IMG/VR virus record: IMGVR_UViG_3300032242_000723
Location: 248,001-312,000 of that record
Length of the DNA: 64,000 nucleotides
Strand: one strand, 5' to 3'
Under the pieces are notes generated by a model. It did not search any database and was not told where the DNA came from. It saw only the letters and a list, made by a program, of their open reading frames with translations. This document shows positions 4,252 through 50,035 of this stretch, one piece after another. The position numbers and the translations under genes are program-made. The stretch's first letter is position 1; every line of letters begins with the position of its first letter.

Positions 4252-5727
4252 ATGAACTATATTGGAATAAGCTGTGGCTTTCACGATGCGGGACTAAGTG
4301 TAGTAGACGATGAAGGTAGGATATTGTTTGCTGGTCACAGTGAGCGATATAGTATGCAAAAGCATGACAAAGACCTATGTGCCGATATTATTCAAGATGC
4401 TCTTGGCTACGTGACAGATGACTATGAGTTGCACTACTATGAGAGGCCATTGCTCAAAGCTGTACGACAGTTCCAAGCAGGACAAGCATTAGGACCCTTT
4501 AGTGCTAAGTCAGTTATCGGCAAAGATAACATGACCATGCTAAGTGATAAGCCGGTCAAGACGCATGGACATCACCTAAGTCACGCGGCTGCTGGATTCC
4601 AAACAAGTCCATACAGTGATGCAACTGTAGTTGTTATTGATGCCATTGGTGAGCTTGACACTATCACTATATATGACGCATCATATGATAAGAGTGGCAA
4701 AGCAGTCTATAAGAAACTATGGAGCCGCATGTATCCTGACTCGATTGGTCTTTTTTATTCTGCGATGACAGCTAGAGTTGGCTTACGTCCACTAGATGAA
4801 GAATATATTCTAATGGGTATGGCCGCGTATGGGAATGCTGACAAATGCATAGACGAAATGGAAGAATCTATTGACTACGAGATGCTAGATTTCTACTATA
4901 ACTTTCATACCGGTGTCGATAGCGAATTCCTAAAGGGGGCAGATGATATGGACATTGCCGCGGCGGCACAGTCTGTTGTTGAAAGGTTAATCAATATGGT
5001 CATGAGTAAAGCCAGACAATATGGCAAGAGTAAGAATCTTGTATATGGAGGCGGCGTTGCATTAAACTGTTTAGCGAATAGAAATCTCGGAGAATATTTT
5101 AAGAATATTTGGATCATGCCTAACCCAGGTGACGCAGGTAACAGTGTAGGTGCAGCAGCATTAGGCTATGGTCGCAAGTTACAGTGGAATAATGCGTTTC
5201 TAGGATACGACATCAAAGGTGATTATCCAGTTGACAATATCATCGATAAGTTACATAATGATAAGATAGTAGGAGTGGCAAGTGGTAGAGCCGAGTTTGG
5301 CCCTAGAGCCTTAGGCAATCGTTCATTACTAGCAGACCCACGAGGACCAGACATTAAGGATAAGGTAAATGCAATCAAACGAAGACAACAGTTCAGACCA
5401 TTCGCACCCGTCATACTTGAAGAGCATCTTACTCAGTACTTTGACATGCCTATTAATTGGGATAGTAGCCGTTATATGCAAGTCATTGCTACTTGTAGGT
5501 ATCCTGACTTATTTCCCGCTATCGTTCATGCTGATGGGACTAGTCGTGTTCAAACAGTTCCAAAAGATAAATCAGGAATCAGACGACTCTTAGAACGTTG
5601 GTATGACGAGACCGGCTGCCCTATGCTACTTAACACATCGTTGAATATACGCGGTGAGCCAATGGTAAATAACCGTTCCGATGCAGATCGGTTTGAAAAA
5701 CTTTATAACGTTACTGTGTGCTCATAA
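4252..5727 (+). CDS. Carbamoyltransferase (NodU/CmcH/TobZ family)
   Basis: GISCGFHDAG, HHLSHAAAGF, GGVALNC, GDAGNSVGAA, EFGPRALGNRSLLADP, FRPFAP, LLNTSLN motifs. Confidence 0.92.
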   Translation: MNYIGISCGFHDAGLSVVDDEGRILFAGHSERYSMQKHDKDLCADIIQDALGYVTDDYELHYYERPLLKAVRQFQAGQALGPFSAKSVIGKDNMTMLSDKPVKTHGHHLSHAAAGFQTSPYSDATVVVIDAIGELDTITIYDASYDKSGKAVYKKLWSRMYPDSIGLFYSAMTARVGLRPLDEEYILMGMAAYGNADKCIDEMEESIDYEMLDFYYNFHTGVDSEFLKGADDMDIAAAAQSVVERLINMVMSKARQYGKSKNLVYGGGVALNCLANRNLGEYFKNIWIMPNPGDAGNSVGAAALGYGRKLQWNNAFLGYDIKGDYPVDNIIDKLHNDKIVGVASGRAEFGPRALGNRSLLADPRGPDIKDKVNAIKRRQQFRPFAPVILEEHLTQYFDMPINWDSSRYMQVIATCRYPDLFPAIVHADGTSRVQTVPKDKSGIRRLLERWYDETGCPMLLNTSLNIRGEPMVNNRSDADRFEKLYNVTVCS

Positions 5728-5734
5728 GTAGTAG

Positions 5735-8700
5735 ATGCTGAGAGATGTCTTTTATTACGGCGATAAGCCAAATGTACACCCACGAGAACAATACGCAGAA
5801 TCATTTGATGATGCTAGACAGAAGTCTACTACAGAACATTTTTGGATCATTAATGAGTTCTGCGATTATCGTGGATTTGATTGGGACTGGGACTTTGAGT
5901 TCCTTCCTGACGAAGACGTATGGGCAGAACAACATACTAACATATGGCCTAGCCAGCATCAAAAAGATAGTGGCACTTGGCTGTGTTCAAGTGAAGAATA
6001 CGATTTAAACCTATTTATATATCGTAATGATGTTACCCCGATTAAGCGTAAAAATATCAAGACATCTAACTGGGTTGAATTTGACCTAATTGATCAGACG
6101 AAGTTCGACTTCTCATGGCATCCGGACCCAACTGATCCTCCTTATATCTATAAATGGGGCAGCAAGTTTGCTCCGGCACAACTTAAGACATGCTTAGAAT
6201 ATCATGTTGAAGGTGCAACTAGAATAAAGTACATGACTAGTATCGTTGAACTATTACCGGATACAGATCGCTGGATCGAACATCAGGCTATCGACAAAAC
6301 TAAGTTTGATATGTCATGGCGTCCAGACCCAATGGATCCCCCTTTTATCTATATTTGGGGTAATAAGTATATAGAAGGTACATTAAGACCTACACTAGAA
6401 TATCGTGTACCCGATGCAATACATACGAAGTATATGCCTGATTTAATCTCAGTACTCCCTGAATATGATAGATGGGTAGAAGTACAGGCGGTAGATAAGA
6501 GCAAGTTTGACTTTAGTTGGCGACCAGATCCAAGAGAACCGGCATATATCTATACATGGGGTAATAAGTATATTGATGCTGAGTTTATACCTACGCTAGA
6601 ATATCATTGCGAAGGCGCAACAGAACGCAAGTATATGACAAATGATGTTGTTGTACTTCCTCAATATGATAGATGGGTAGAAGTACAGGCGGTAGATAAG
6701 AGCAAGTTTGACTTTAGTTGGCGACCAGATCCAAGAGAACCGGCATATATTTATGTTTGGGGTAATAAGTATATAGAAGGTACATTAATACCTACATTAG
6801 AGTATCATTGTCCCGATGCGACTAAAGTAAAGTATATGACAAACGATGTTGTTGTACTTCCTCAATGGGACAAATGGCAAATTCCTGACAATCTTGACAA
6901 GGCATCATTTGACTTTAGTTGGAGACCTGATCCACGTGAACCTGATTTTATTTACGAGTTTGCAACTCAATGGCAGAAGACAGGTGGACCGCGTTATATT
7001 GTAGAGAACGCAAAACAAAGAAAGTTTATAAATGATATACGAGCTACTATTTTGCCCACACACGCAAATTGGACTATTCCAGACAATATTGACATTAACA
7101 GTTTTGACTTTAGTTGGCATCCTGACGATACCGATCCTGCTTATATCTATGTATTTGGTACTCAATGGGCAACAAGTGGCGGACCAATTTACACTGTTGA
7201 CAATGCTACTAAAACAAAATATGTAGGAGTTCAGGTAGCGTCTGCTGTTGCATCTAAAACTAATTGGAAGTATAATTCAACTGTTGTAGATGAGAGTCAG
7301 TTTGATTTCTCGTGGCATCCAGATCCAAGAGAACCTGCATATATCTATGTATGGGGTAACAAATATGAAGACGGTAAATATAAATCTACAATAGAATATC
7401 ATGCCGAAGGTGCTACTGATGTCAAGTATATGACAAATGATGTCGCTTTGCTTCCTGATTGGGATAGATGGGTATTTCTTAAAGAGGTAGATAAGAACAA
7501 GTTTGACTTTAGTTGGCGACCAGACCCATTAGAACCCGCCTATATCTATACCTGGGGTAACAAGTATGAACCTGCTGAAATATCTCCGACGTTAGAATAT
7601 CATTGTCCTAACGCTACTGATGTAAAGTATATGGGCGATACAGCTCCTGTACTCCCTGAATGGGATAGATGGCAAATTCCTGATAACGTAGATAAATCTA
7701 AGTTCGACTTTACCTGGAGACCGGACCCAAGAGAGCCGCCCTTTATGTATGCGTTTGCTACTGTATGGAATGATAGGGGCGGCCCCATCTATGTTGCACC
7801 TACTTCAACTAAATTCAAATACATTGAAGATGTTAAAGCAGTATTGTTGTCGAGTACTGATAATTGGGAAATTTCTGAAGGAATAAATGTTTCTGACTTT
7901 GACTTCTCGTGGGTTCCGCACCCTCAGGCACCACCTTATATCTATCAGTTTGGTACATTAGGAGATCCTGACGACGGTCCAAGATATGTTTCTCCTGGTA
8001 ATAACGGCGAAATCGTTAAACTTAGAAGAGTAACAAAGAAGTTTGAAAAAGAACAGGTTGTCGCACAGTACTACATCGAAACAACGTTAGCTGATCTAGC
8101 CAGCAAATACCCTAGAAAATTATTTTGGGCTAAACAAAAAAATATTGATTATTCAACGTTCGACTTCACATGGCGACCTACGATTGAACAGGCAGAATAT
8201 GTACATGTATTTGGTTCGTCTGATTCAGATGCCACCCATACATATTTAGTTAACGGTATGCAATGGGCCAAAGGCAATCGTGAATTAAACTGGGTCAAAG
8301 ATGATAAGCTTGATGACAAGACACTGTTCAACATATTCAAGAAGTCTGATATGTTCTATGTTGACAAAGGTAATTTAGAAGCACAAGTAAGATTTGAAAA
8401 GCTTAGACTATTACACCCGCAGATACAAAAGACACGCTATCTAAACTCGTGGGTCGATACTATAAAGCGTTGTAATAATCGTGCAACGAGTGAATTGATA
8501 TGGGTACTCAACTCTGAGCTTGACTATACTGACTTTGACTTTGAATACTATCCTAATCCTTGGCAGATGAAGATGGTACATGTATTTGGTACACAGTGGT
8601 CACATTGGGGAACAACTTTCATGGTTAACAGAGAAACATTTGCCGAAGACACAAAGTATATTAATATCATTGAGCATCTATCTAACATTAACTTTGTAAA

Positions 8701-10069
8701 GAACATCAGAGCTACAGCAACTCAATGTGTATACGATACGATTATTATTGATCACGGTAATAAAGAACTTGATCGAGTCGTAGAACAAGTTACTAGCAAA
8801 ATATCTGGTAAGAACGTAACTGTTGTAAAGTATAACGAAAGTTATTTGCAAACCTTAAAGGATATTGTCGCACGACAGCAAGATAAAAAAGAACATTATC
8901 TGTGGCTATGTAGCAGTGTATGCGACTACTCATCGTTTGATTTCTCATATACTGTTGATCCATTTGCTAGAGATAATCTACATGTATTTGCTAGTGGTAG
9001 TCAGAAGTTTGGTGATACTTTCTTTATTGACGTAAATAAGGCCAAAGAGATTATTGATAAAATGTTGTCGTTAGAATATTATCATAAGGTCAACTATAAT
9101 AATGCACAAAAGGTCACCCGATTACCAGAGCCAATCATTGTTACGAATAATGATACATTAATTGACGCGGCGATGCATATTGAAGGTTTCCCTTATGCAA
9201 CAATCATCACAAGTGATAATAAAGATATCACTGTAATGCCAACAGAGCCTATGAATCTGTGGGCTCCGGAAACTAAGAACATCTTAGTTACATCTACTGG
9301 TGCAACTCGTATTGTTGTGCCTCGTGAAGTCAAAGATCATGTAAGCAAAGAACTATACGACTATCCGTATATTAAGAAAGCATCTAAGCTTGCTATCTCA
9401 TCGCCTATGGACATCGTGTATTTGAGCAACGGTGAGACAGGTGCGGAAGAGAACTGGGAACATCTGCAAAAGATCACAAAGGGATTAAAGAACCGTGTTG
9501 TTCGTGTTGATGGGGTCAATGGTCGTGTTCAAGCATATCATGCAGCATTGGAAGCGAGTGAGACACCTTGGGCATTCACTGTGTTTGCTAAGTTAAAGAT
9601 CAGTCCAAAGTTTGACTTCAACTGGCAACCAGATAGAATGCAAGCTGCAAAGCATTATATCTTCCACGCAAAGAATCCTGTCAACGGCTTGATTTACGGA
9701 CACCAGGCAATGATCGCATACAACAAGCGACTTACATTAGCTAACAAGGGTAACGGACTTGACTTCACTCTAGACGATGAACACGAAGTTGTGCCATTGT
9801 TGTCAGGTATCGCAAACTATAACACAGACGAGTTTTCCACTTGGCGTACATCTTTCCGTGAAGTGTTGAAGTTGAAGGCTGAAGATAGTGACATTGCTCG
9901 TACACGATTAGATGCGTGGCTTAACAAGGCAGAGGGTGACTTTGCTCAATATAGCATCAAGGGTGCGATTGACGCTGATGAATATTATGACGAGGTTGAT
10001 GGTGACTTTGATATGCTGAAGCTTAGTTACGAGTGGTCCTGGCTGAAAGAAAAGTTCGCTAACTCATAA
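5735..10069 (+). CDS. 1444-aa protein with about 15 FDFSW(R/H)PDP repeats and degenerate glycosyltransferase-like domains
   Basis: About 10 tandem ~67-aa units (FDFSWRPDPREPAYIYxWGNKY...PTLEYH..GAT..KYM) plus degenerate copies. C-terminal GT-A-like segment MDIVYLSNGE...VDGVNGRVQAYHAA...FTVFAK. Confidence 0.75.
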   Translation: MLRDVFYYGDKPNVHPREQYAESFDDARQKSTTEHFWIINEFCDYRGFDWDWDFEFLPDEDVWAEQHTNIWPSQHQKDSGTWLCSSEEYDLNLFIYRNDVTPIKRKNIKTSNWVEFDLIDQTKFDFSWHPDPTDPPYIYKWGSKFAPAQLKTCLEYHVEGATRIKYMTSIVELLPDTDRWIEHQAIDKTKFDMSWRPDPMDPPFIYIWGNKYIEGTLRPTLEYRVPDAIHTKYMPDLISVLPEYDRWVEVQAVDKSKFDFSWRPDPREPAYIYTWGNKYIDAEFIPTLEYHCEGATERKYMTNDVVVLPQYDRWVEVQAVDKSKFDFSWRPDPREPAYIYVWGNKYIEGTLIPTLEYHCPDATKVKYMTNDVVVLPQWDKWQIPDNLDKASFDFSWRPDPREPDFIYEFATQWQKTGGPRYIVENAKQRKFINDIRATILPTHANWTIPDNIDINSFDFSWHPDDTDPAYIYVFGTQWATSGGPIYTVDNATKTKYVGVQVASAVASKTNWKYNSTVVDESQFDFSWHPDPREPAYIYVWGNKYEDGKYKSTIEYHAEGATDVKYMTNDVALLPDWDRWVFLKEVDKNKFDFSWRPDPLEPAYIYTWGNKYEPAEISPTLEYHCPNATDVKYMGDTAPVLPEWDRWQIPDNVDKSKFDFTWRPDPREPPFMYAFATVWNDRGGPIYVAPTSTKFKYIEDVKAVLLSSTDNWEISEGINVSDFDFSWVPHPQAPPYIYQFGTLGDPDDGPRYVSPGNNGEIVKLRRVTKKFEKEQVVAQYYIETTLADLASKYPRKLFWAKQKNIDYSTFDFTWRPTIEQAEYVHVFGSSDSDATHTYLVNGMQWAKGNRELNWVKDDKLDDKTLFNIFKKSDMFYVDKGNLEAQVRFEKLRLLHPQIQKTRYLNSWVDTIKRCNNRATSELIWVLNSELDYTDFDFEYYPNPWQMKMVHVFGTQWSHWGTTFMVNRETFAEDTKYINIIEHLSNINFVKNIRATATQCVYDTIIIDHGNKELDRVVEQVTSKISGKNVTVVKYNESYLQTLKDIVARQQDKKEHYLWLCSSVCDYSSFDFSYTVDPFARDNLHVFASGSQKFGDTFFIDVNKAKEIIDKMLSLEYYHKVNYNNAQKVTRLPEPIIVTNNDTLIDAAMHIEGFPYATIITSDNKDITVMPTEPMNLWAPETKNILVTSTGATRIVVPREVKDHVSKELYDYPYIKKASKLAISSPMDIVYLSNGETGAEENWEHLQKITKGLKNRVVRVDGVNGRVQAYHAALEASETPWAFTVFAKLKISPKFDFNWQPDRMQAAKHYIFHAKNPVNGLIYGHQAMIAYNKRLTLANKGNGLDFTLDDEHEVVPLLSGIANYNTDEFSTWRTSFREVLKLKAEDSDIARTRLDAWLNKAEGDFAQYSIKGAIDADEYYDEVDGDFDMLKLSYEWSWLKEKFANS
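6462..6750 (+). repeat. 88-bp identical direct repeat with 201-bp period inside the repeat gene
   Basis: 6462-6549 is identical to 6663-6750. Confidence 0.9.
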
Positions 10070-12231: not shown

Positions 12232-12596
12232 ATTGAAACTGTTGATACAGGATCAAAGTTGGCGTAGACGCGGGTGCGAATCCCGCCGCCTCCACCATAG
12301 ATACACTAAAGGTGAGAACGGCTACCTCACGCACCAGAAATGGTATAGTAACGATAAAACGTGAAGAGATCCAGGATTGCATCTGGTTAGTGTGTCTATG
12401 ATGGGGGCGACTAGAATCGATACGCAATGGCGACGACGAGTAGGTTTCCGGTAAGTTACGACCGACAATTTGTACAAAAAACGTAAATGCTAACTTTATT
12501 GCTAGCAATGACAACGAGTTTGTAGCTATGGAAATGGCTGCTTAATCTGAGTTATTTGGAGCTTCGGGGATGTGCTCTATAACCTAAACATCCTCA
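12232..12596 (+). ncRNA. ssrA: Circularly permuted (two-piece) tmRNA
   Basis: T-arm GCGGG-UGCGAAU-CCCGC plus CGCCUCC-A-CCA ending at 12297 lies upstream of the 5' end GGGGGCG (12403), giving a 7-bp acceptor stem with G3-U70. Tag ORF 12489-12545 encodes ANFIASNDNEFVAMEMAA* after GUAAAU. The outer ends are approximate. Confidence 0.92.
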
Positions 12597-13367
12597 CTTA
12601 TCTGGGTACACCCAATATTTTGTACCATCTTTCCTAGATATCAGTTTTCTTCCTGTTACTGTTTGAGATTGTTTATCACGCCCTTTTCTGCCGTTAACAG
12701 CAGCGTTAGGGTTAGATAATCCTTTATTCCAGGCCGCTTTCCCTTTTTTAAATCCCGGAACCGCTGTTCCTTTTATCCAGGCAATCTTACCAGAACATAC
12801 CTTTGAACAAGTTTTTTGTTTTTGTGTATAGGTAGTAAAATCTTCGCAACACGCTGGGCATTGTTTAGTATGCAAGAGTTTGATTTTTTTTGTATTTCCT
12901 ACTTTCTTGGTAGTATTGTTTCGTTTCTTTTTTGTCACAGGACAATCAAGTGGAATAAATGACAGTAGCCCACTCTGCCTTAGTTCAACTTCTACTTTAC
13001 TATATCCTTTATTCCAGGCTGGTTTAGTTCTGTTTTTGGTATGTCCCTTACAACTTCCGCCCCTGGATAGTTTCTTTTGATTATAATATCTAACTGTTTT
13101 GTTCTGTATATTAGTGGTCCAATACAGTTCAGTGTCTTTGATCATATTAAGCCAGCGTTGTTCTGCATTACGCAAATCATCTAATTCACCATTAACATAT
13201 TCTAGTACTCTAAACTTAAAGGTATCTGGTCGTTTCTTGTGTGCCCGCAACATCATTGTGTTAGAACAAATATATGCATCTTCTATTAGTCCTTGATGTC
13301 CACCGACATAATAGAACTTTGCTTTGGTATCAAACCAAAGATACACGTAGCCAGTATAAATATTCAT
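12594..13367 (-). mobile_element. Free-standing GIY-YIG (Seg-like) homing endonuclease
   Basis: GYVY-x10-YYVGGH N-terminus, FKFRVLE..E..WL, YYN; repeated AWNKG/AWIKG DNA-binding-module motifs and a CPAC...CSKVC Zn ribbon. Confidence 0.8.
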
Positions 13368-13437: not shown

Positions 13438-13460
13438 ATACCTCATTGATAAATACTCGT

Positions 13461-16400
13461 ATGAATCTCAATGAACTCCATTCTTTCAAACTTGCAGATG
13501 CTATCAAGTTTCATACGGAACTTAATCCAAAACTTTGGAAAAATGACCAGTTAGATCCATTAGTTAGAAAGCAGTTATTGATTATTGCTGAGGACTTTGT
13601 TGAGGAGTTAGGAATACCTGATTTGGATATAGTTGATGTAACTATCTCAGGTTCTAACGCCGCATTTACCTGGACTAAACATAGCGATTTAGACCTTCAT
13701 ATCCTCGTAAATATGAGCGAGTTGCACCAAGACGCAATCTACCGCGAACTATTCAGAGCAAAGAAGACATTATATAATAGTAATCACGATATCACGGTGC
13801 ACGGCATCCCAGTTGAACTTTATGTTCAAGATTCAGCCGAACCTGTTGTATCGTTAGGTGAGTACAGTATCCTACATGATAAGTGGATCAAGGTCCCTGT
13901 TCGTAGAGCGGCCAAGTTAGATCAAAATGCTGCCAAAGCAAAGTTTGACCAACTTAAAGATTTGATTAGTGTTGCACTTAAGACTAAGCATAGCAAAAAG
14001 ATCAGTAAAGCCCTAGCATTAATCAAACGTTATCGCCAAGCTGGTCTTGACAAGGGCGGCGAGTTCAGTCCTGAGAACCTTGCCTTTAAGGCTGTTAGAT
14101 CGCAAGGTGCGATTGATGCACTATATGCAATGCGTGATAAGTTACACAGTGCAGAGTTAACGATTGAAGAAGGCTACGCTGGAGCCAAGATGAAGTTCTT
14201 GAAGCCAGGTGAATTGCGTGGATCGTACACGCCTGCTAAACTTACCGCATTAGGATTCAAGAAGTCACAGAACGGCTCATGGTTCATTCTACAATCTAAG
14301 TGGGAAGAGTTGCGTAAGACTGGTCAACTATATGAGACCGATGTTGTTGCAGAAAATCTCAGAAAAGAGTTTGAAGACTTTGATCCTGAAAACTTAGCTG
14401 AAGCACTTGACTCTACACCATATCCTTATGAAGAGATTTCGTCCACTCACCATAACTATATTGCTAGTAGAAGCCAATACATATTCACTACTGAAGATAA
14501 TCTGCCTTATGTAGCTATGATATTCAAATATCCAGGCAATAGAATCCGTATTGAGTTTAAGTCCACAAAGCAAACTCGTGATTTTCTTGGGTTCGAGGTG
14601 ACAGGTACAGGTGATGCCCGTAAGGTATTCGCTACTGTGATTGACATTGTGAAGAAGTATGTAGATAAGCATCATCCTGTTGAAATATCATTCTCAGCCA
14701 AAGAACCAAGCAGAGTCCGTTTATACGATGCGTTCTTGAAAAGACTGGATAGAGAGTTACCTGATTATGAAGGCAAATCGGGTCCAGGATACGAACCAGA
14801 TAATACATATTACCATCTCACTTTAAAAAATCAAAAGATAGACGAATCACTTGACTCACAACCATATCCTTATATTTCAACTATCGGCACAACAGGTGCA
14901 CATGAATATGCGTTCACTACGGATGACGATAACGAATATGAAGCCATAATCATTAATCAAAAATTTGGGATCCATGTATCTTTTTTTCTAAAACAAAAAC
15001 AACATAAAAATGGCCTAATCATAACCCGCACAGGTATAACGGGTACCGGCGATGCTCGTAGAGTGTTCGCTACTGTTATTGATATCGTGAAGAAATTCGC
15101 AGCAGCAGAGAAGCCTGAAGCCATAGTGTTTACTGCAAGTGAACCTAGCAGGATCCGTTTGTATGACGCATTCGTTAAAAGATTAGACAGAGAATTACCT
15201 GAGTATGCTGAGACTCGTAAAGAAAAAGGCATGGCAGAATGGTTCGTACTTCTACGCAAAACTAAGAAGATAGACGAAGCAACCGACCGTGACAGTGCGA
15301 TTAAGCAGATATTGAAGTTACAGAACACACAAGGTCGTTCACCAAGTGAGATAGAGGCATCAAAAGCTATCATCGCTAAAATGATGAAACGCTATAACAT
15401 TCATTCAAAAGAGTTGCTACCAGTTGAACGTAATCCATACCAAGATCGTATCAAACAAGCACGAGCCGAGCGTGATGTAGCAGGCGATATGCTAAAGGCA
15501 GAGTGGGATAGATTCAAAGGTGGGATCAAGGATAAGGTGTCTACTATCTTTAAAGAAGACTTAGACGAAGCACTTGATTCCCAACCATATCCATACGAGA
15601 TTGAAGAAGATAGCATAGCCTGGCAGATCAGCACCTTCACGACAAGTGACCGAAACCGTTATAAGGTTTGGGTAGTGAAATACAGTAATAAAGAAGTTTC
15701 GGTTGAATTCTCCTATCAAGGTAACGATGACATTGACACGAACTCAATGGAAATTGAAAACATAGGTGATGCCCGTAAGGTATTCGCTACTGTGATTGAG
15801 ATTGTAAAGAACTACGCTAAGAAGTATAAACCTAATAAGATTTCTTTTGACGCTGATCCAACTGAACCAAGCAGGATTCGTTTTTATAGTGCTCTTGTCA
15901 AGAGAGCAGACCGAATGTTGCCGGACTACGAAGATCAATCAATTGACTTCCTAGGTGACTTCAACCTTGTTAGAAAAGGTTATCAGTTTAACGAATCAAT
16001 AGTCTATCATGTGACCCCTACTAAAAATGTAAAGTCTATTATGCGTGACGGATTACGACCTCAAGTCGGCAACCGTTCGAGTAAGATTACAGGTGAAGAT
16101 AATGGTATCTTTGTCTTCAATAGCAAAAACGATGCAGAAGATGCTATAATGAACTGGCTCGGTGATGAGTTCGGTGAAGATGCTGAGTTAACCTTATTAG
16201 CAATCGATGCTGAAGGATTAGAACAGCATATGTCTACGGGTGCAGGATACGAAACAATCATGGATGTAGGGATCGAGCCTAGTCGTATTCGAGTAACTCA
16301 GGATATTCTTGAAGCATCTGGTTACATTCCAAGCAAGAAGGAAGCGAACGATCCTCGCTTCTCAACTGCGTTAACGGTAGATGTGAAACCTGATTCAATA

Positions 16401-16481
16401 CAAAAGAACGCTAAGGCATTTGGTTCAAAAACTTCACGAGCAGGTATTCCACCTCAAGCACGGACTGACGGCAAGATTTAA
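13461..16481 (+). CDS. 1006-aa polyvalent polyprotein: nucleotidyltransferase + 3 copies of an unknown domain + DUF2786-like + ADP-ribosyltransferase-like
   Basis: Start ATG 13461, 5 nt after TAAATA. SGSNA..SDLDLH Pol-beta NTase motif; three E(A/S)LDSxPYPY...GDARKVFATVI...EPSRIRLY units; KQILKLQ..SPSEIEASKAIIAKMMKRYNI; YHVT..NVKSIMRDGL.P. Confidence 0.8.
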   Translation: MNLNELHSFKLADAIKFHTELNPKLWKNDQLDPLVRKQLLIIAEDFVEELGIPDLDIVDVTISGSNAAFTWTKHSDLDLHILVNMSELHQDAIYRELFRAKKTLYNSNHDITVHGIPVELYVQDSAEPVVSLGEYSILHDKWIKVPVRRAAKLDQNAAKAKFDQLKDLISVALKTKHSKKISKALALIKRYRQAGLDKGGEFSPENLAFKAVRSQGAIDALYAMRDKLHSAELTIEEGYAGAKMKFLKPGELRGSYTPAKLTALGFKKSQNGSWFILQSKWEELRKTGQLYETDVVAENLRKEFEDFDPENLAEALDSTPYPYEEISSTHHNYIASRSQYIFTTEDNLPYVAMIFKYPGNRIRIEFKSTKQTRDFLGFEVTGTGDARKVFATVIDIVKKYVDKHHPVEISFSAKEPSRVRLYDAFLKRLDRELPDYEGKSGPGYEPDNTYYHLTLKNQKIDESLDSQPYPYISTIGTTGAHEYAFTTDDDNEYEAIIINQKFGIHVSFFLKQKQHKNGLIITRTGITGTGDARRVFATVIDIVKKFAAAEKPEAIVFTASEPSRIRLYDAFVKRLDRELPEYAETRKEKGMAEWFVLLRKTKKIDEATDRDSAIKQILKLQNTQGRSPSEIEASKAIIAKMMKRYNIHSKELLPVERNPYQDRIKQARAERDVAGDMLKAEWDRFKGGIKDKVSTIFKEDLDEALDSQPYPYEIEEDSIAWQISTFTTSDRNRYKVWVVKYSNKEVSVEFSYQGNDDIDTNSMEIENIGDARKVFATVIEIVKNYAKKYKPNKISFDADPTEPSRIRFYSALVKRADRMLPDYEDQSIDFLGDFNLVRKGYQFNESIVYHVTPTKNVKSIMRDGLRPQVGNRSSKITGEDNGIFVFNSKNDAEDAIMNWLGDEFGEDAELTLLAIDAEGLEQHMSTGAGYETIMDVGIEPSRIRVTQDILEASGYIPSKKEANDPRFSTALTVDVKPDSIQKNAKAFGSKTSRAGIPPQARTDGKI

Positions 16482-16875: not shown

Positions 16876-18015
16876 ATGTCTCAAGTATCTACCGATCTAA
16901 CGGTTAACTCCGTACAGGCTCGCAAGGCCATTCTACAAGCATTCAAGGTCAAGCGACCCGTGTTTCTCTGGGGTCCCCCAGGTATCGGTAAATCGGAAGT
17001 TGTTTCCGATATCACTGATGAACTCGGCGGCTATATGGTCGATCTGCGTATGGCGCAGATGGAACCTACTGATATTCGCGGTATTCCTTACTTCAATAAG
17101 GAAAACGGCAAGATGGACTGGGCTGAGCCTGTCGATCTTCCAAGTGCTGAACTCGCTGCACAATATCCAATCGTCGTTCTCTTCCTCGATGAAATGAACT
17201 CGGCACCCCCTGCTGTTCAGGCAGCTGGTTATCAGTTGATCCTCAATCGTCGTGTTGGTAAGTACAAGCTTCCTGATAACGTGGTTATTGTCGCTGCTGG
17301 TAACCGCGATAGCGATAAGGGCGTTACATATCGTATGCCGATGCCGCTCGCAAATCGTTTCGTTCACATTGAAATGCGTCCTGACTTCGCATCTTGGCAA
17401 GCATGGGCTGTCAACAAGGGCATTCACCGTGACGTTGTTGGTTATCTCTCGTTCGCTAAGCAAGACTTGTATGACTTCAACGCTAAGTCGTCTTCTCGTG
17501 CATTTGCTACCCCGCGTTCGTGGTCCTTCGTTAGCGACATGATCGCCAATGAAAATGTCCCTTCGACTAGCGAAGATACGCTTGACAAGTTGGCAGGCGC
17601 ACTTGATCAAGATACTCTCTTGCATCTTGTCTCGGGTTCTGTTGGTGAAGGCCTTGCTACGAAGTTCATGGCACACCGCAAGTATGCAAGTCGTATGCCT
17701 AATCCTGCTGACATTCTGTCGGGTAAGGTCAAGGATCTTGACGTGAAGGAAATCTCTGCGATGTATTCGTTGACGATTTCTATGTGTTACGAGTTGCGTG
17801 ATGCAGTCACTAACAAGGTCGATCATAAGCAGTTTCATATCATGATTGATAACTTCCTCGAATATATGATGAAGAACTTTGAGACTGAGTTGGTTATCAT
17901 GGGTGCAAAGGTCGCTCTCAAGACCTACAAGCTTCCTATTAAGCATGAGGATTTGAAGACGTTTGATGCGTTCCACAAGCAGTTCGGTCGGCATATTGTG
18001 GAAGCAGGTAGCTAA
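16876..18015 (+). CDS. MoxR/CbbQ-like AAA+ ATPase
   Basis: Walker A GPPGIGKS, Walker B LFLDEMN, AAGN, PLANRF, TPRSW. Confidence 0.9.
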   Translation: MSQVSTDLTVNSVQARKAILQAFKVKRPVFLWGPPGIGKSEVVSDITDELGGYMVDLRMAQMEPTDIRGIPYFNKENGKMDWAEPVDLPSAELAAQYPIVVLFLDEMNSAPPAVQAAGYQLILNRRVGKYKLPDNVVIVAAGNRDSDKGVTYRMPMPLANRFVHIEMRPDFASWQAWAVNKGIHRDVVGYLSFAKQDLYDFNAKSSSRAFATPRSWSFVSDMIANENVPSTSEDTLDKLAGALDQDTLLHLVSGSVGEGLATKFMAHRKYASRMPNPADILSGKVKDLDVKEISAMYSLTISMCYELRDAVTNKVDHKQFHIMIDNFLEYMMKNFETELVIMGAKVALKTYKLPIKHEDLKTFDAFHKQFGRHIVEAGS

Positions 18016-18133: not shown

Positions 18134-19432
18134 ATGACCACACTCACTACGGCTAGTAAGCAAAGTAAGAAAAAGAAGTCTAGCGGCGAAAAATATGAAA
18201 ATCTCGTAGGACCAACTGATCCTAAAGTAGACTTTGCTGCACGAGATCGTTTGGTCTCTGCCCGTGTCGGGCTTTTGCTAAATCATTCTTTCTTCGGCAA
18301 CCTTGCAACTCGCATGAAGTTGATCAACGCTGATGAATGGTGCGGTACTGCTGCAACCGACGGACTAAACTTCTATTACAACTCACGCTTTATTATGATG
18401 CTCAGGACTAAGGAAGTTGAATTCCTAGTCGGTCACGAAGTCCTTCACATTGTTTATGATCATTTGGGTCGTCGCGGTAGCCGTGATCCTCAAATCTTTA
18501 ACATCGCAAACGACTATGCAGTCAACGCAGACTTGAAGAAGCACAAGGTCGGTGAGTTCATTACGACGGTACCTTGCTTGTATGATGCTAAGTATCTTGA
18601 CTGGGCTTCGGAAGTAATCTATGACGATTTGATGAAGAATGTTCAATACATCAACGTCCAGTCTTTGCTTGATCAAATGATTGACGATCACTTAGATGGT
18701 GAAGGCGATAGTGACGAAGACGGCGAGGGCGAAGGCAACGGTAACGGCAAGGGTCGTCCAAAGATGACCGAAGCCGAACGCGAGGCTATGCGTCAAGAAA
18801 TGAAGCAGGCTATCATCAGTGCTGCACAGTCTTCGGATGCAGGTTCTGTCCCGCTTGGTGTTCAACGTATGATCAAGGATCTCACTGATCCTGTTATGCC
18901 CTGGCGCGAATTGATCCAAACAAACTTGACTTCGGCTATCAAGAATGATTATAGCTGGATGCGTCCTTCGCGTCGTAGCTGGCATATGGATGCAGTGATG
19001 CCTGGTATGACTCCCGGTGAAGAGATTGACGTGACTGTCATGGTTGATATGTCAGGTTCTATCTCTAACAAGCAGGGGATGCAGTTCCTAAGTGAAGTTG
19101 CAGGTATGATGGACTCGTTTGATGGCTATCGTATTCGCATTGCTTGCTTTGATACTCAAGTGTATAACATGCAGGAGTTTACTTCTGAGAACATGGAAAA
19201 GATCGAGGAATATCAACTAGCAGGCGGCGGGGGAACCGATTTCGATTGCTTCTTCAACTATCTTAAGGAAAATGCTATCGAGCCTAATCGGTTGATCGTA
19301 TTCACAGATGGGTATCCGGCCGGAAGTTGGGGCGATCCAGAATACTGCGATACAACTTGGATCATTCATGGTGATCCCAATCCAAATCCCCCATTCGGAA
19401 CTTTTGCGATTTATGATGATCACATGAATTAA
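18134..19432 (+). CDS. Metallopeptidase-like (HExxH) + vWA domain protein (DUF2201-like)
   Basis: TAATDG, HEVLH, NIANDYAVN, MIDAS VDMSGS, GGGGTDF, VFTDG. Confidence 0.88.
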   Translation: MTTLTTASKQSKKKKSSGEKYENLVGPTDPKVDFAARDRLVSARVGLLLNHSFFGNLATRMKLINADEWCGTAATDGLNFYYNSRFIMMLRTKEVEFLVGHEVLHIVYDHLGRRGSRDPQIFNIANDYAVNADLKKHKVGEFITTVPCLYDAKYLDWASEVIYDDLMKNVQYINVQSLLDQMIDDHLDGEGDSDEDGEGEGNGNGKGRPKMTEAEREAMRQEMKQAIISAAQSSDAGSVPLGVQRMIKDLTDPVMPWRELIQTNLTSAIKNDYSWMRPSRRSWHMDAVMPGMTPGEEIDVTVMVDMSGSISNKQGMQFLSEVAGMMDSFDGYRIRIACFDTQVYNMQEFTSENMEKIEEYQLAGGGGTDFDCFFNYLKENAIEPNRLIVFTDGYPAGSWGDPEYCDTTWIIHGDPNPNPPFGTFAIYDDHMN

Positions 19433-20042
19433 TAATGCTTGTACTGGAGAAATCCTCGTATAACTGTACGAGGGTTTTTTCTGACTTTTTGTGTTTCTTA
19501 TAGTTTTCTTTATCGGTTATTAACCTAAGATTGGATATATCCGAGACTACGTTGATAGGTACATCATTTAAAAATCCATCAGTGACACTAAAAATATGAT
19601 CCACATGCCAATCTCTACTTCTTTTTCGTTCCGGATCAATATCATCTATATGTCTTGAATACTGAGTTTCTGCGTATTGATGGCATCGTCTTCCGTAGGT
19701 AGCACGATCCATACCATCAATAGTAAAATCTTTGTTTTCATAAATCTTGTTCCAATAGTCTGATCGTTTTTCGGAAAGGTCTTTCTTGATACAGGGTGCT
19801 TTAGAAACATTATCTACCCCATATTTCTCTATTGATTTTTCTTTGCGGACATCCTTCACGTAATCACATGAACTCGCATTAGGGAAACCATATCGTTCTA
19901 CGCATGTTTCCTGCATCCTCTTTAGGACCGCAGGACATCCTGCCGGTTTATGCGAACATACTGCTTTTCCTTTTTTGGTAAATCTTATTGCTTGGTCACC
20001 ACAACCATTTTCACATAGCGGTAAAGATTGATCTAAATACAT
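19362..20042 (-). mobile_element. HNH-type (putative homing) endonuclease with N-terminal CENGCG Zn motif and CxxRYG repeats
   Basis: Start corrected to ATG 20042 after AAGGAG. WHVDHIFSV..GF...ISDISNLRLI...N.KK is an HNH-like C-terminus; TCVERYG and SIEKYGVDN repeats. Confidence 0.7.
19450..19480 (+). terminator. Terminator after the vWA gene (lies inside the antisense HNH ORF)
   Basis: AAATCCTCGTA/TACGAGGGTTT stem followed by a T-run. Confidence 0.65.
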
Positions 20043-20044
20043 TT

Positions 20045-20113
20045 GCTGATAGCTCCTTGTAAGCATTAGAGTAGTTGGAGACGCCAATCTCGCGAACTAC
20101 ATCTTTATTTATC
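20045..20113 (-). promoter_or_regulatory. Conserved leader element, copy 2
   Basis: Minus strand: GATAAATA, same hairpin stems and AAGGAG as 13368-13437; only the loops differ. Confidence 0.85.
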
Positions 20114-26581: not shown

Positions 26582-27139
26582 ATGAGTACCACACCACTAT
26601 ATAATCAACAAGTTATCAACATTGGTGCACAGCCAAATGATGGCGTGGGCGATCCGTTACGTGTAGCGTTTGAGAAAGTAAACAATAACTTCTCTAATCT
26701 ATTTGCTACCTTTGTTAACTCTACTATTGCTTATACATTTGGAAACACTGCTGGTCAGGTTATCTTTGAATATCCAGCAAACGCTTTCTCTGAGGGTCAG
26801 TTCTATATTCAATCAAGTGATACTGGAACACCAGACAGACAAAATATTCAACTTTTTGCACAGATTAATCCAGCACATGATACTATCAAGTTCAGTGGTT
26901 ATGGTTCTACCTTCTTTGGTAACTGTACTTCTCGCTATAATATGGATGTTGTTGGTGGCAATGTAAGAATATTGGCCAACCCATTGATTGACGATGATAT
27001 GACTCACTTTATCTCTTCGCAGATCATGTGGACAGGCCCAAATGTACCAGGTATGTATATCTCTCCCGATGGATATGCTAACTCATCTATCGCTACCGAA
27101 ACAGTGGTCAACATCACAACAGAGCAACCTGCACCATGA
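26582..27139 (+). CDS. Baseplate wedge-like structural protein (T4 gp9/gp10 N-terminal motif)
   Basis: INIGAQPNDGVGDPLRVAFEKVNNNF motif. Confidence 0.7.
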   Translation: MSTTPLYNQQVINIGAQPNDGVGDPLRVAFEKVNNNFSNLFATFVNSTIAYTFGNTAGQVIFEYPANAFSEGQFYIQSSDTGTPDRQNIQLFAQINPAHDTIKFSGYGSTFFGNCTSRYNMDVVGGNVRILANPLIDDDMTHFISSQIMWTGPNVPGMYISPDGYANSSIATETVVNITTEQPAP

Positions 27140-27555
27140 GAGCTTGGGAATTTCTAACAGAAGCACAACTTCATCCAGAAGAAGCATCGTTGCCTACAAA
27201 GCCAACCGACAAGTTACTTCCTGATCAGGCCGGCGCATTGCCCGCTACTTATATCATTCCTGAACTACCTAACCAAGATCCATATCTACAATATCGTTTC
27301 GGAGTAGCATTAGCAGGCGCTAAAGGTAGAAAACAACGAGAACAAGATGGTGTTTCTAGTATGGATCGCACGAGTGCATTCGGTGAAGCAGAGATCATTG
27401 TATCGTACGGTGATGATGTCGGACCATTTATTGACGATGCTCTTAAGCAAATGGGCATGAGTGGAAAGAAGATGGTAAGCACTCCTACGAGTATAGAAAC
27501 TTCTGATGTTACTAAAGTTAGCCCAATGAGACCGTTTAAAGGATATGCAAGATGA
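27136..27555 (+). CDS. Putative head/internal protein with capsid-targeting-like N-terminus
   Basis: MRAWEFLTE; paralog of the next gene (shared S..E...V.KVSP ending). Confidence 0.6.
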   Translation: MRAWEFLTEAQLHPEEASLPTKPTDKLLPDQAGALPATYIIPELPNQDPYLQYRFGVALAGAKGRKQREQDGVSSMDRTSAFGEAEIIVSYGDDVGPFIDDALKQMGMSGKKMVSTPTSIETSDVTKVSPMRPFKGYAR

Positions 27556-27932
27556 GAGCACATGAGTTTATTAGTGAAGGTACTGGTGTTCCACCTGAAT
27601 CCCATACTCACGCCCACAGCGGCGGTTATAAGTTTATGGATAACGGAACAGACAGAACTTACAACTTGAATCGCATCATGGCCGCAGCAGGGCAATCTGA
27701 CGGTAAATCAACGAAAGCAATAAAAGACTTCGATGATGAAAGTTTTGCTGGTAAACATAACATGGCTTATCCTTATACTGAGATTGAACACAACATGCTG
27801 AAGCAAGCATTCAATACTGTTTCTCCTAGCGATGTTCATCGTATTCCTGGCGACAAAAGTAGTGCTGAGCATCCATCTACACATAAAGTAAGTCCGGTTG
27901 CTAAACGACCTACTGATCACAGAAAAAAATAA
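27552..27932 (+). CDS. Putative head/internal protein with capsid-targeting-like N-terminus
   Basis: MRAHEFISE; tandem paralog of the previous gene. Confidence 0.6.
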   Translation: MRAHEFISEGTGVPPESHTHAHSGGYKFMDNGTDRTYNLNRIMAAAGQSDGKSTKAIKDFDDESFAGKHNMAYPYTEIEHNMLKQAFNTVSPSDVHRIPGDKSSAEHPSTHKVSPVAKRPTDHRKK

Positions 27933-49283: not shown

Positions 49284-49835
49284 ATGGCACATGCAATCAT
49301 GATTGATATGGAAACGCTTGACACTGCTACGTCAACAGTTATCCTTACCATCGGCGCGGTATTGTTTGATCCAATGGGATCCGGTATTATCGAACAAATC
49401 GAACTTCGTCCTACTATGGATGAACAAACAGACGTATACAATCGTACAATCAGTGAAGACACTCTGCGTTGGTGGAGCGAACAAAGCCCTGACGCTATCA
49501 ACGAAGCAATGGGTGATCATGATCGTATCCCATATAAGGAATGTATGGAGAAACTTGCTAAGTTCTGCTGGAACAGAAAGGCTGTTTGGTCTAACGGTTC
49601 CGTCTTTGACATCATGATTGCAGAGTCGTCCTTCGCTGAACTTGACATCAAGACTCCTTGGCAGTTCTGGTCTATCCGCGATTGTCGTACTATATATGAA
49701 CTTGCAAATGTCAGCCTCAAAGACGGTGGACACGTGACCTCACACAAGGCAGTAGAAGATGCGGCTCATCAGGCTGCATGTGTTCAACGAGCATACAAGA
49801 AACTGTATGACGCAGGGTTTACGCACCTCAAATGA
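49284..49835 (+). CDS. DEDD 3'-5' exonuclease (RNase AS/DexA-like)
   Basis: MIDMETL, VWSNG..FD, RDCRT, HKAVEDA..QA. Confidence 0.85.
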   Translation: MAHAIMIDMETLDTATSTVILTIGAVLFDPMGSGIIEQIELRPTMDEQTDVYNRTISEDTLRWWSEQSPDAINEAMGDHDRIPYKECMEKLAKFCWNRKAVWSNGSVFDIMIAESSFAELDIKTPWQFWSIRDCRTIYELANVSLKDGGHVTSHKAVEDAAHQAACVQRAYKKLYDAGFTHLK

Positions 49836-50035
49836 CTAAGATTTATGAGTTTCCTCCTCAGCAACGGAAAACTGTTGAAACTTGGCTTACTGAGAACGTA
49901 AGCATAGAGGGGACTCGGTGGTGGACACATGGATTGAACGTGACTACTGAAGGACCATTGGTATATAAAGTTCACATTGATCTTACTGAAGAAGAAGAAT
50001 CTAAACTTACTTGGTTTATATTGGCAAATAAATGA
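49832..50035 (+). CDS. Small protein of the dispersed family
   Basis: ETWLTENV ... LTWFILANK. Confidence 0.55.
   Translation: MTKIYEFPPQQRKTVETWLTENVSIEGTRWWTHGLNVTTEGPLVYKVHIDLTEEEESKLTWFILANK

What the first reader, a model, noticed from the sequence alone, without database searches (positions are those of the whole stretch)
13461..16481. Effector polyprotein punctuated by prohead-protease-like cleavage sites
Seen: every domain boundary carries a hydrophobic-x-E followed by a small residue: IEE/G, LAE/A (14400), IDE/S (14844), IDE/A (15276), LDE/A (15567), FNE/S (15993), ILE/A (16311). The modules are a Pol-beta-type nucleotidyltransferase (GS..DLD), three copies of an unknown domain, a DUF2786-like helix bundle and an ART-like YHVT..SI...GL.P domain. 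Established: T4 gp21 cleaves after (I/L)-x-E, T4 Alt is a packaged and injected ADP-ribosyltransferase, and polyvalent proteins occur in phages. Inference: a late-made precursor is packaged, cut into separate enzymes in the capsid, and injected to nucleotidylate or ADP-ribosylate host targets.
Basis: partly seen in the sequence, partly recalled or inferred. Interest (0 to 1): 0.85.

Follow-up and report, generated by a model that had tools for sequence, protein, structure and literature searches.

The report
Cleavable multi-enzyme protein of a jumbo phage
A giant uncultured phage encodes a 1006-residue string of host-modifying enzyme modules joined by short linkers that look exactly like the cutting sites of the T4-type capsid protease, so it is probably loaded into the phage head, cut into pieces and injected, but no experiment shows this yet.

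Summary
ORF 13461-16481 (+) is uninterrupted and 1006 aa long. It carries exactly seven [ILVFM]-x-E-[GAS] motifs, and all seven sit on the seven module breakpoints found independently from homology.

The modules are:
- a Pol-beta-type nucleotidyltransferase;
- a 77-aa unknown module;
- three DUF6934 copies with a GNAT-like fold;
- a helical module that is not DUF2786;
- a mini ADP-ribosyltransferase-fold domain, closest to the KptA/Tpt1 NAD lobe;

More than 800 metagenomic relatives share the N-terminal enzyme and shuffle the other modules. About 95-100% of their junctions keep (V/L/I)-x-E|(A/S), against a 19% background.

Free-standing versions of the modules, and two small ORFs in this window, begin with MRAxEFIxE leaders like the T4 capsid-targeting sequence MKTYQEFIAE. 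The closest cultured relative, PA5oct, has a T4 gp21-type protease. The gene shares an ATAAATA-N5-ATG element with the terminase and a virion gene.

Best reading: a head-packaged polyvalent effector cut in trans by the prohead protease. Packaging and cleavage are inferred, not shown. This is a new variant of known kinds.

The parts
13448..13455 (+). GATAAATA element 5 nt before the ATG. It resembles a T4 late promoter and may give a near-leaderless transcript.
   Evidence: The same [TGA]ATAAATA-N5-ATG geometry precedes TerL (31931), a virion protein gene (33518) and ORF 27963. ATAAATAC occurs in 36 of 51 unique upstream regions of related polyvalent genes, against 0.9 expected.
13461..16481 (+). 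Whole ORF: a 1006-aa polyvalent protein (P0001).
13461..14171 (+). Module A (res 1-237): Pol-beta-type nucleotidyltransferase. It ends in ...LTIEE|G.
   Evidence: phrog_36119 at 8e-42. PF01909 at E 0.009, below cutoff. Profile against PDB: 2rff at E 0.026 and DrrA at 0.17, aligned on GS..D.D. G64, S65, D76, D78 and E119 are invariant. Free-standing ~230-aa homologues occur in cyanophages, Lak phages and Maribacter phages.
14172..14402 (+). Module B (res 238-314): small module of unknown function (MKFLKPGELRGSY...). It ends in NLAE|A.
   Evidence: It recurs directly after the NTase in many relatives. No Pfam hit.
14403..14846 (+). Module C1 (res 315-462): DUF6934 with a GNAT-like fold. It ends in KIDE|S.
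   Evidence: PF22028. AF2 model with pTM 0.76. Foldseek matches SpeG and other GNATs at E 6e-4.
14847..15278 (+). Module C2 (res 463-606): second DUF6934 copy. It ends in KIDE|A.
   Evidence: It shares 69 of 148 identical residues with C1.
15279..15569 (+). Module D (res 607-703): basic helical module of unknown function. It ends in DLDE|A.
   Evidence: It recurs after the NTase in many relatives as A..R[DE]DA..KIKKL. Pfam gives only a sub-threshold HTH_68 hit (E 0.007) and no DUF2786.
15570..15995 (+). Module C3 (res 704-845): third DUF6934 copy. It ends in QFNE|S.
15996..16313 (+). Module E (res 846-951): mini ADP-ribosyltransferase-fold domain (YHVT...). It ends in DILE|A.
   Evidence: AF2 pLDDT is about 90 over residues 1-103 of the model. 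Foldseek matches KptA/Tpt1 at E 1e-4, then CC0527, PltA, PARP2 and DarT. Small phage proteins of 100-125 aa match in BFVD. H850 is invariant and R872 nearly so. Position 884 is Phe here and Tyr in 36 of 52 homologues.
16314..16478 (+). Module F (res 952-1006): conserved basic tail (pI 10), ASGYIPS..DPRF..ALTVDV..RAGIPP..GKI. It is predicted disordered with one short helix.
   Evidence: It lies at the C-end of 194 relatives of 72-1566 aa and is internal in 76. Amino-acid identity is 84% while third-codon-position identity is only 46-48%, so selection acts on the peptide. pLDDT is about 50. There is no Pfam, PDB or GenBank-phage match.
14163..14174 (+). Junction site 1: I-E-E|G (res 235-238).
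14394..14405 (+). Junction site 2: L-A-E|A (res 312-315).
14838..14849 (+). Junction site 3: I-D-E|S (res 460-463).
15270..15281 (+). Junction site 4: I-D-E|A (res 604-607).
15561..15572 (+). Junction site 5: L-D-E|A (res 701-704).
15987..15998 (+). Junction site 6: F-N-E|S (res 843-846).
16305..16316 (+). Junction site 7: I-L-E|A (res 949-952).
   Evidence: The segment is disordered in the model.
27136..27555 (+). Small ORF (139 aa) with the T4-CTS-like leader MRAWEFLTE|A. It shows that this genome uses such leaders.
   Evidence: No family or phage match.
27552..27932 (+). Small ORF (126 aa) with the T4-CTS-like leader MRAHEFISE|G.
   Evidence: No family or phage match.

Best explanation
The gene encodes a polyvalent effector of an uncultured jumbo myovirus of the T4 superfamily, near PA5oct and Phosso. 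It looks like an end-to-end fusion of small internal-protein genes.

The string reads: nucleotidyltransferase, module B, GNAT-like, GNAT-like, helical D, GNAT-like, mini-ART, F tail. At every junction the fusion kept the cleavage end, (V/L/I)-x-E|(A/S/G), of a T4-style capsid-targeting leader.

Proposed mechanism (inferred, not shown):
1. The protein is made together with packaging and virion genes.
2. It is incorporated into the prohead core.
3. The gp21-type (S77) prohead protease cuts it in trans at the seven sites, giving pieces of about 27, 9, 17, 16, 11, 17, 12 and 6 kDa.
4. The pieces are ejected with the DNA and modify host targets by nucleotidylation, acylation and NAD-dependent transfer.

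Shown here: the architecture, the folds, the conservation of the junction motif, the leaders and the regulatory motif.
For: Placement of the motifs
- All seven motifs coincide with independently mapped module breakpoints, and none is internal to a module.
- Across the family, 95-100% of junctions carry h-x-E against a 19% background.
- Before F, positions P8-P4 are unconserved (under 0.55 bit). P3 is V/L/I (2.0 bit), P2 is free, P1 is E in 90% and P1' is A in 90%.
- An internal F is followed by GK-[IL]-x-E in 41 of 42 unique cases. This is often followed by DLMKEWKSFLAE, which matches T4 MKTYQEFIAE in register.

Leaders
- Free-standing E, F and C proteins, 41 neighbouring ORFs in 80 related loci, and two window ORFs start with MRAxEFIxE or MKIxE(L/I)(L/I)xE.
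- A gene that starts MKIKELLNE|GMTFNPV in some genomes appears fused as ...GKIAESLINE|GMTFNPV in others.
- T4 head proteins show the same L/I-x-E|A/S ends (PMC9026906).

Phage background
- TerL is 48-49% identical to those of Phosso and PA5oct.
- PA5oct has a T4-ordered head module with an S77 protease 38% identical to gp21, a 73-aa virion protein starting MKINDIITE|G, and a scaffold-like protein with eight such motifs.

Other points
- No peptidase domain or HExxH is present in the protein.
- Junction 7 is disordered, and junctions 2 and 3 are of low to moderate confidence in the models.
- The ATAAATA-N5-ATG element is shared with TerL and a virion gene.
Against: - There is no proteomic or biochemical evidence.
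- The genome's own protease and head genes are outside the 64-kb window and could not be linked to it.
- The protein's N-terminus (MNLNELHSF...) is part of the NTase domain, not a recognisable CTS.
- The gene lies among metabolic and replication genes, not in a head module.
- The shared start-proximal motif also precedes a methyltransferase-like ORF, so it is not proof of late timing.
- In many relatives the first junction reads IET|M or IEN|V, which does not fit I-x-E.
- The seven sites amount to only about four independent events.
- Motif retention could be inheritance from fused leaders rather than current function.
Confidence: 0.55

Rival explanations
1. Fusion relic. The junction motifs are leftovers of the leaders of once-separate genes and are no longer cut. 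The protein works as one intact multi-domain enzyme, whether packaged or not.
For: Fused and unfused versions of the same junction exist. Many modules that follow the NTase begin with Met (IET|MY...), as expected from gene fusion. N4 vRNAP is a precedent for an uncleaved packaged polyvalent protein (PMC5512222).
Against: Across 178 unique contexts, P3 and P1 stay conserved while P2 and P8-P4 drift. This points to present selection on the motif itself. Linker lengths between the motif and module E vary from 1 to 9 residues while the motif is kept.
Confidence: 0.2
2. Ordinary cytoplasmic multi-domain enzyme. The h-x-E-small strings are structural boundary elements such as helix caps or domain N-terminal arms, or simply conserved edges of shuffled modules, with no link to any protease or to the capsid.
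For: The motif at junction 2 is modelled as a short helix. EAS is contiguous with the invariant GYIP of F and could be part of that module. The gene is not next to head genes.
Against: The same three-position pattern precedes five unrelated modules and follows F. It equals the C-terminal end of N-terminal leaders that match the experimentally defined T4 CTS (PMC9026906). A structural cap would not be expected on folds as different as GNAT-like, ART-like and a disordered tail.
Confidence: 0.15
3. Processing occurs outside the capsid, by another phage or host protease that recognises h-x-E. The result would be a true cytoplasmic polyprotein, as in RNA viruses.
For: There is no CTS at the protein's own N-terminus. 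A 2026 preprint abstract says proteolytic activation by phage protease enzymes triggers host CBASS immunity (PMC12991175, abstract seen).
Against: No candidate protease was seen in the window. The motif matches the S77 prohead-protease logo, and the leaders match a capsid-targeting signal.
Confidence: 0.07

Closest known systems
T4 internal proteins IPI-III and Alt, which have a capsid-targeting sequence and are processed by gp21
   Same: The leaders MRAxEFIxE and MKEWKSFLAE resemble T4 MKTYQEFIAE. Cleavage-type ends are (L/I/V)-x-E|A/S. The cargo is diverse and fast-shuffling and includes an ART-fold enzyme, as with Alt. The phage belongs to the T4 superfamily (PMC9026906, PMC3012670).
   Different: T4 cargo are single proteins trimmed only at their ends. 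Here up to eight modules are strung together with a site at every junction. The polyprotein's own N-terminus is not a CTS. A conserved 55-aa tail, F, has no T4 counterpart. The ART is KptA-like in fold, not the R-S-E Alt type.
Polyvalent proteins of phages and conjugative elements (Iyer, Burroughs, Anand, de Souza, Aravind 2017)
   Same: Many unrelated effector domains sit in one polypeptide, with extreme domain shuffling. ART, GNAT, ParB and NTase themes recur. Relatives carry PF18760 ART-PolyVal. Injection with the DNA is predicted (PMC5512222).
   Different: The 2017 set is centred on embedded zincin or assemblin-like peptidases for self-release. That paper found Pol-beta NTases only in conjugative-element versions. 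This protein has no peptidase and has prohead-protease-type linkers instead (PMC5512222).
Ejection and inner-body proteins of phiKZ, 201phi2-1 and SPN3US, cut by gp175/gp245
   Same: These are jumbo-phage head cargo cut after Glu by a gp21-related protease, often at several sites (PMC9026906).
   Different: As I recall, the P3 residue in those phages is small (S/A/G-x-E). This is from memory and was not checked here. In this family P3 is V/L/I, as in T4. The phiKZ-type proteins are not strings of enzymes.
Tpt1/KptA RNA 2'-phosphotransferase and small phage KptA-like proteins
   Same: Module E superposes on the NAD-binding ART lobe with 24-27% identity over about 100 residues, and shares the YH(V/G)T strand.
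   Different: E lacks the N-terminal RNA-binding lobe, which I recall carries most of the Tpt1 catalytic tetrad (from memory). E is about 100 aa, and its activity is unknown.

Membership tests
Polyvalent proteins (Iyer et al. 2017) | Two or more unrelated effector or enzyme domains in one phage polypeptide, with shuffled architectures among relatives | tested here: met
   NTase, three GNAT-like modules, an ART-fold module and three unknown modules. More than 800 relatives show varied C-terminal domain sets.
Polyvalent proteins (Iyer et al. 2017) | Embedded peptidase (zincin MPTase or assemblin-like) as the hub domain for self-processing | tested here: not met
   No peptidase family in Pfam or PHROGs and no HExxH string. 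None appears among the precomputed Pfam domains of the 120 listed relatives.
T4-type capsid-targeted cargo (IPs, Alt) | N-terminal capsid-targeting sequence of the MKTYQEFIAE type | tested here: inconclusive
   This protein starts MNLNELHSF..., which is part of the NTase domain. Free-standing homologues of its modules and two window ORFs do carry such leaders.
T4-type capsid-targeted cargo (IPs, Alt) | (L/I)-x-E followed by a small residue at the processing points | tested here: met
   Seven sites, all at module junctions. The family logo is, and the T4 comparison.
T4-type capsid-targeted cargo (IPs, Alt) | gp21-type (Peptidase S77) prohead protease in the same genome | not testable with these tools
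   It is not in the 64-kb window or in the F-bearing loci. It is present in the nearest cultured relative, PA5oct, with 38% identity to gp21. No listed S77 hit could be tied to the 333,583-bp scaffold.
T4-type capsid-targeted cargo (IPs, Alt) | Presence in virions and ejection into the host | not testable with these tools
   The phage is uncultured, and no GenBank phage carries module F.
Pol-beta nucleotidyltransferase superfamily | hG[GS] ... D-x-[DE] catalytic motif plus a third acidic residue | tested here: met
   G64, S65, D76, D78 and E119 are invariant in 36 relatives. They align to the GS..D.D of 2rff and DrrA.
Pol-beta nucleotidyltransferase superfamily | Significant profile match to a curated NTase family | tested here: inconclusive
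   PF01909 scores 16.8 bits against a cutoff of 21. The PDB profile E-value is 0.026. The fold was not modelled.
ADP-ribosyltransferase superfamily | ART split-sheet fold | tested here: met
   Foldseek probability is 1.00 to KptA/Tpt1 (E 1e-4). CC0527, PltA, PARP2, DarT1 and RES follow. The model pLDDT is about 90.
ADP-ribosyltransferase superfamily | Catalytic triad (H-Y-E/D or R-S-E) | tested here: inconclusive
   H850 is invariant and R872 nearly so. The Tyr position is Phe884 in this copy and Tyr in 36 of 52 homologues. Residue-level superposition was not available.
ART-PolyVal (PF18760) | Pfam match above threshold | tested here: not met
   Module E has no PF18760 hit. In relatives such as P0014, PF18760 is a separate module at residues 811-981.
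DUF6934 (PF22028) | Pfam match above the gathering score | tested here: met
   94.6 bits against a cutoff of 27, in three stretches.
GNAT acyltransferases | GNAT fold and acyl-CoA pyrophosphate loop (Q/R-x-x-G-x-G/A) | tested here: inconclusive
   The top 50 Foldseek hits are almost all GNAT-fold proteins, but E is only 6e-4 and TM about 0.44. A conserved TG-x-GDA loop precedes the long helix. The N-terminal GNAT helices are absent, and there is no PF00583 hit.
   The only hit is HTH_68 at E 0.007, below the cutoff.

The most novel reading that the evidence does not exclude
The 55-residue F tail is a portable head-loading or protease-docking tag. It is as strongly conserved as a structural protein yet is attached to hundreds of unrelated enzymes. 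Together with the leader-derived cleavable linkers, it would form a natural cargo-tag plus cut-site system. Such a system would let a clade of jumbo phages load arbitrary strings of effector enzymes into the capsid and release them as separate proteins on maturation. That would be a trans-processed DNA-phage polyprotein.
Probability: 0.3. Interest if true: 0.85.

Novelty: new variant of a known kind. Interest (0 to 1): 0.72.

Why it matters
If the reading is right, the T4 rule for capsid cargo (a short leader plus an I-x-E cut) extends beyond T-even phages. It would operate in a large uncultured jumbo-phage clade and would have been reused as a linker to build polyproteins.

It would also give a second route for releasing the domains of polyvalent effectors: the prohead protease acting in trans, rather than an embedded peptidase.

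The finding flags more than 1000 candidate injected proteins, recognisable by leader, linker and F tail. This is a ready catalogue of possible anti-defence enzymes.

It also suggests simple natural parts (leader, linker, tail) that could be tested for protein packaging in laboratory phages.

Tried and rejected
- Megablast of the gene and of 25 kb of the window against GenBank phages found nothing. One call failed on a size slip.
- tblastn of F and of the two leader ORFs against GenBank phages found nothing.
- A single-sequence PDB search of the NTase found nothing. An F profile against PDB found nothing meaningful. PADLOC found nothing.
- The exact TATAAATA count in the window (8 against 4.55 expected) is not significant on its own. 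Only the fixed spacing to ATG was informative.
- Multi-module alignment A3 misplaced the B and D fragments and was discarded. B, D and the NTase were therefore not modelled.
- T4 head proteins (gp20, 67, 68, 21, 22, 23, 24) gave no tblastn hit in the window, in 80 F-bearing loci or in PA5oct 96-190 kb.
- PA5oct gp212, annotated 'head maturation protease', is unrelated to gp21 (E 57) and is probably ClpP-like. The IMG/VR scan run with it returned no F-bearing contig and was wasted.
- I searched the true PA5oct S77 protease against the protein database, hoping to spot a hit on the 333,583-bp scaffold. None of the 120 listed hits carried that contig length.
- DNA-level homogenisation as the cause of F conservation was rejected, because third-position identity is only 46-48%.
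Full report
**1. What is in the sequence**

Window 13461-16481 (+) is one open reading frame of 1006 codons with no internal stop. An upstream TTG at 13398 is also possible. Relatives, however, all begin with the same M-(D/N)-(I/L)-x-E-L-x-S-F sequence, so ATG 13461 is the start.

Their number alone is unremarkable: 7 against 3.95 +/- 1.95 in shuffles, p about 0.1. Several are homologous positions of a repeated module, so they represent roughly four independent events.

Their placement is what stands out. I mapped module borders independently, from the ends of BLAST alignments to 253 relatives. The borders fall at residues 235-240, 305-315, 460-465, 600-605, 695-700, 845 and 945-950, which is on the seven sites. 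The protein has no other [ILVFM]-x-E-[GAS] motif.

**2. The modules**

- **A (1-237).** A Pol-beta-type nucleotidyltransferase. G64-S65 and D76-x-D78 are invariant in 36 relatives. They align to the catalytic GS...D.D of a PDB nucleotidyltransferase (2rff, E 0.026) and of the Legionella AMPylase DrrA (E 0.17). Pfam hits are consistent but sub-threshold. Free-standing ~230-aa homologues occur in cyanophages, Lak megaphages and Maribacter phages.
- **B (238-314).** Unknown function, no family match.
- **C1, C2, C3 (315-462, 463-606, 704-845).** These are DUF6934 (94.6 bits) and are 41-47% identical to one another. An AlphaFold model of C1 with its linkers has pTM 0.76. It matches GNAT-fold proteins almost exclusively, with SpeG at E 6e-4 and TM about 0.44. 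A conserved TG-x-GDA loop sits where GNATs bind the CoA pyrophosphate.
- **D (607-703).** Basic and helical. It is not DUF2786 and shows only a sub-threshold HTH_68 hit.
- **E (846-951).** Modelled with pLDDT about 90. It has the ADP-ribosyltransferase fold. The best matches are the NAD lobe of KptA/Tpt1 (E 1e-4, 24-27% identity over about 100 columns), followed by CC0527, typhoid-toxin PltA, PARP2, DarT1 and RES. Many 100-125-aa phage proteins share this fold. His850 is invariant. The usual Tyr is Phe884 in this copy.
- **F (952-1006).** It is predicted disordered apart from one short helix.

**3. The family**

More than 800 metagenomic proteins share module A at 60-65% identity. They carry different sets of downstream modules: ART-PolyVal PF18760, PF18905, DUF6934, ParB, GNAT, deaminase and amidoligase. 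They lie on contigs of up to 512 kb. This is the pattern called polyvalent proteins (PMC5512222).

An exhaustive search with E+F found 1439 representatives. E and F are separate modules. F lies at the extreme C-terminus of proteins of 72-1566 aa, or sometimes internally. It is 70-86% identical throughout.

Among 55 distinct coding versions, F is 84% identical in protein. At third codon positions it is only 46-48% identical. The peptide itself is therefore under strong selection, and DNA homogenisation is not the cause. F has no Pfam, PDB or GenBank-phage match.

**4. The junction motif is a family-wide rule**

[ILVMF]-x-E occurs within the 12 residues before F in 154 of 162 unique contexts. 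The figures are 56 of 59 before E, 23 of 23 before C and 17 of 17 before D. The background over all 12-mers is 19%.

In 178 unique contexts before F, positions P8-P4 carry under 0.55 bit. P3 is V/L/I (2.0 bit), P2 is free (0.9 bit), P1 is Glu in 90% and P1' is Ala in 90%.

When F is internal, its end reads GK-(I/L)-x-E in 41 of 42 unique cases. Between the motif and the start of E, the spacer varies from 1 to 9 residues, yet the motif is kept.

One exception: the first junction reads IET|M or IEN|V in many relatives. That does not fit I-x-E, although an I-Q-E often follows a few residues later.

**5. Link to T4 capsid targeting**

T4 ipII and ipIII, read from the T4 record, begin MKTYQEFIAE|A. 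Other T4 head proteins show L/I-x-E|A/S ends: gp24 MAKINELLRE|S, gp22 ...LIAE|A, gp67 ...LIE|A and gp23 ...FLTE|A.

The review PMC9026906 states that the first 10 residues of IPIII suffice for packaging. Residues 4 and 7 matter for targeting, and residues 8 and 10 for processing by gp21.

In this family, free-standing E, C and F proteins start with MRAKEFITE, MRATEFITE, MKISELLLE, MKIYEIINE and the like. In 80 related 20-kb loci, 41 ORFs start this way, all on the gene strand. The window itself has two such ORFs, at 27136 (MRAWEFLTE|A) and 27552 (MRAHEFISE|G). Of the 584 Met starts screened in the window, only three matched the pattern: these two ORFs and one on the antisense of the ATPase gene, which I take to be spurious.

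After an internal F, many relatives carry DLMKEWKSFLAE, which matches the T4 sequence in register. A gene that begins MKIKELLNE|GMTFNPV right after the polyvalent gene in some genomes is fused in others as ...GKIAESLINE|GMTFNPV.

I conclude that the junctions are the retained cleavage ends of such leaders, and that the polyprotein is a string of fused leader-type genes.

**6. What phage this is**

The window carries TerL, a gp32-like SSB, UvsX, UvsY, an RnlA-type RNA ligase, helicases and a primase.

TerL is 48-49% identical to those of Sinorhizobium phage Phosso and Pseudomonas phage PA5oct, and it hits 2665 mostly T4-like records.

PA5oct has a T4-ordered head module: portal, a 73-aa virion protein starting MKINDIITE|G, a protease, a scaffold-like protein with eight h-x-E-small motifs, and a capsid protein starting ...LFE|S...LTE|G. 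Its protease is 38% identical to T4 gp21 (E 9e-24) and is PF03420.

The window's own head genes lie elsewhere on the 333,583-bp scaffold, and I could not reach them.

**7. Timing**

GATAAATA lies 5 nt before the ATG. The same element and spacing precede TerL, a virion protein gene and one methyltransferase-like ORF in the window.

ATAAATAC at that position is present in 36 of 51 unique upstream regions of related polyvalent genes, against 0.9 expected.

It resembles the T4 late promoter TATAAATA. This is my own knowledge and is an inference. It suggests co-expression with packaging genes but does not prove it.

**8. Verdict**

The module calls are right except DUF2786.

The cleave-in-the-capsid model now rests on strong comparative evidence, but it is still untested. 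The protein lacks a CTS at its own N-terminus, and its protease has not been seen.

The closest known systems are the T4 internal proteins and Alt, and the polyvalent proteins of Iyer et al. This protein differs from the first in being a multi-module string with an extra conserved tail. It differs from the second in having no embedded peptidase and carrying prohead-protease-type linkers instead. I rate it a new variant of known kinds. The role of the F tail is the most open and most interesting question.

Noticed in passing
window 27136-27555 and 27552-27932 (+): Two adjacent small ORFs (139 and 126 aa) begin MRAWEFLTE|A and MRAHEFISE|G, like the T4 capsid-targeting sequence. They have no Pfam, PHROG or GenBank-phage match and are candidate internal (injected) proteins.
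   Followed up: partly
window 13448, 27950, 31931, 33518 (+); loci L006-L085: [TGA]ATAAATA followed by exactly 5 nt and ATG precedes the target gene, a methyltransferase-like ORF, TerL and a virion protein gene. ATAAATAC just before the ATG is conserved in 36 of 51 related loci. It could be a T4-late-like promoter giving near-leaderless mRNAs, or a translation signal.
   Followed up: partly
window 12594-13367 (-) and 19362-20087 (-): Two reverse-strand ORFs look like homing endonucleases. The first has a GIY-YIG-like N-terminus by eye and abuts the target gene's upstream region. The second hits phrog_3339 (homing endonuclease) at E 1e-5.
   Followed up: no
window 5735-10069 (+): A 1444-aa ORF with no PHROG match lies directly after a Nol-like carbamoyltransferase gene (4252-5727).
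   Followed up: no
window 49284-49835, 50032-50613, 50825-51349 (+): DNA polymerase seems to be encoded in pieces: an exonuclease-like 183-aa ORF and a 193-aa polymerase fragment, followed by a peptide deformylase gene. PA5oct also has a split polymerase, interrupted by a homing endonuclease.
   Followed up: no
window 14703, 15141, 15864, 16275 (+): The hexapeptide EPSR(I/V)R occurs four times in the protein: once in each GNAT-like copy and once in the unrelated ART-fold module E. Unexplained.
   Followed up: no
window 16876-18015 and 18134-19432 (+): A MoxR-type AAA ATPase and its phrog_1314 partner lie just downstream of the target. PA5oct has an ATPase (gp149) and an 'HNH endonuclease'-labelled gene (gp144) near each other at 234-239 kb, separated by four genes; I matched them to the window pair from annotation only. 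No polyvalent gene is annotated in the ~10 kb upstream of that ATPase.
   Followed up: partly
L089 350-1021 (PA5oct gp212) and loci L090-L169: The PA5oct gene annotated 'head maturation protease' (gp212) is unrelated to T4 gp21 (BLASTP E 57). It is 62-69% identical in the 80 IMG/VR contigs kept of 574 confirmed matches, so it is probably a ClpP-like protease and mislabelled. The real S77 protease is gp331.
   Followed up: partly
L171 10922-11143 (PA5oct gp333): A 73-aa virion-detected PA5oct protein, in the position of T4 gp67, begins MKINDIITE|G. This is the same leader style as in the uncultured clade.
   Followed up: no
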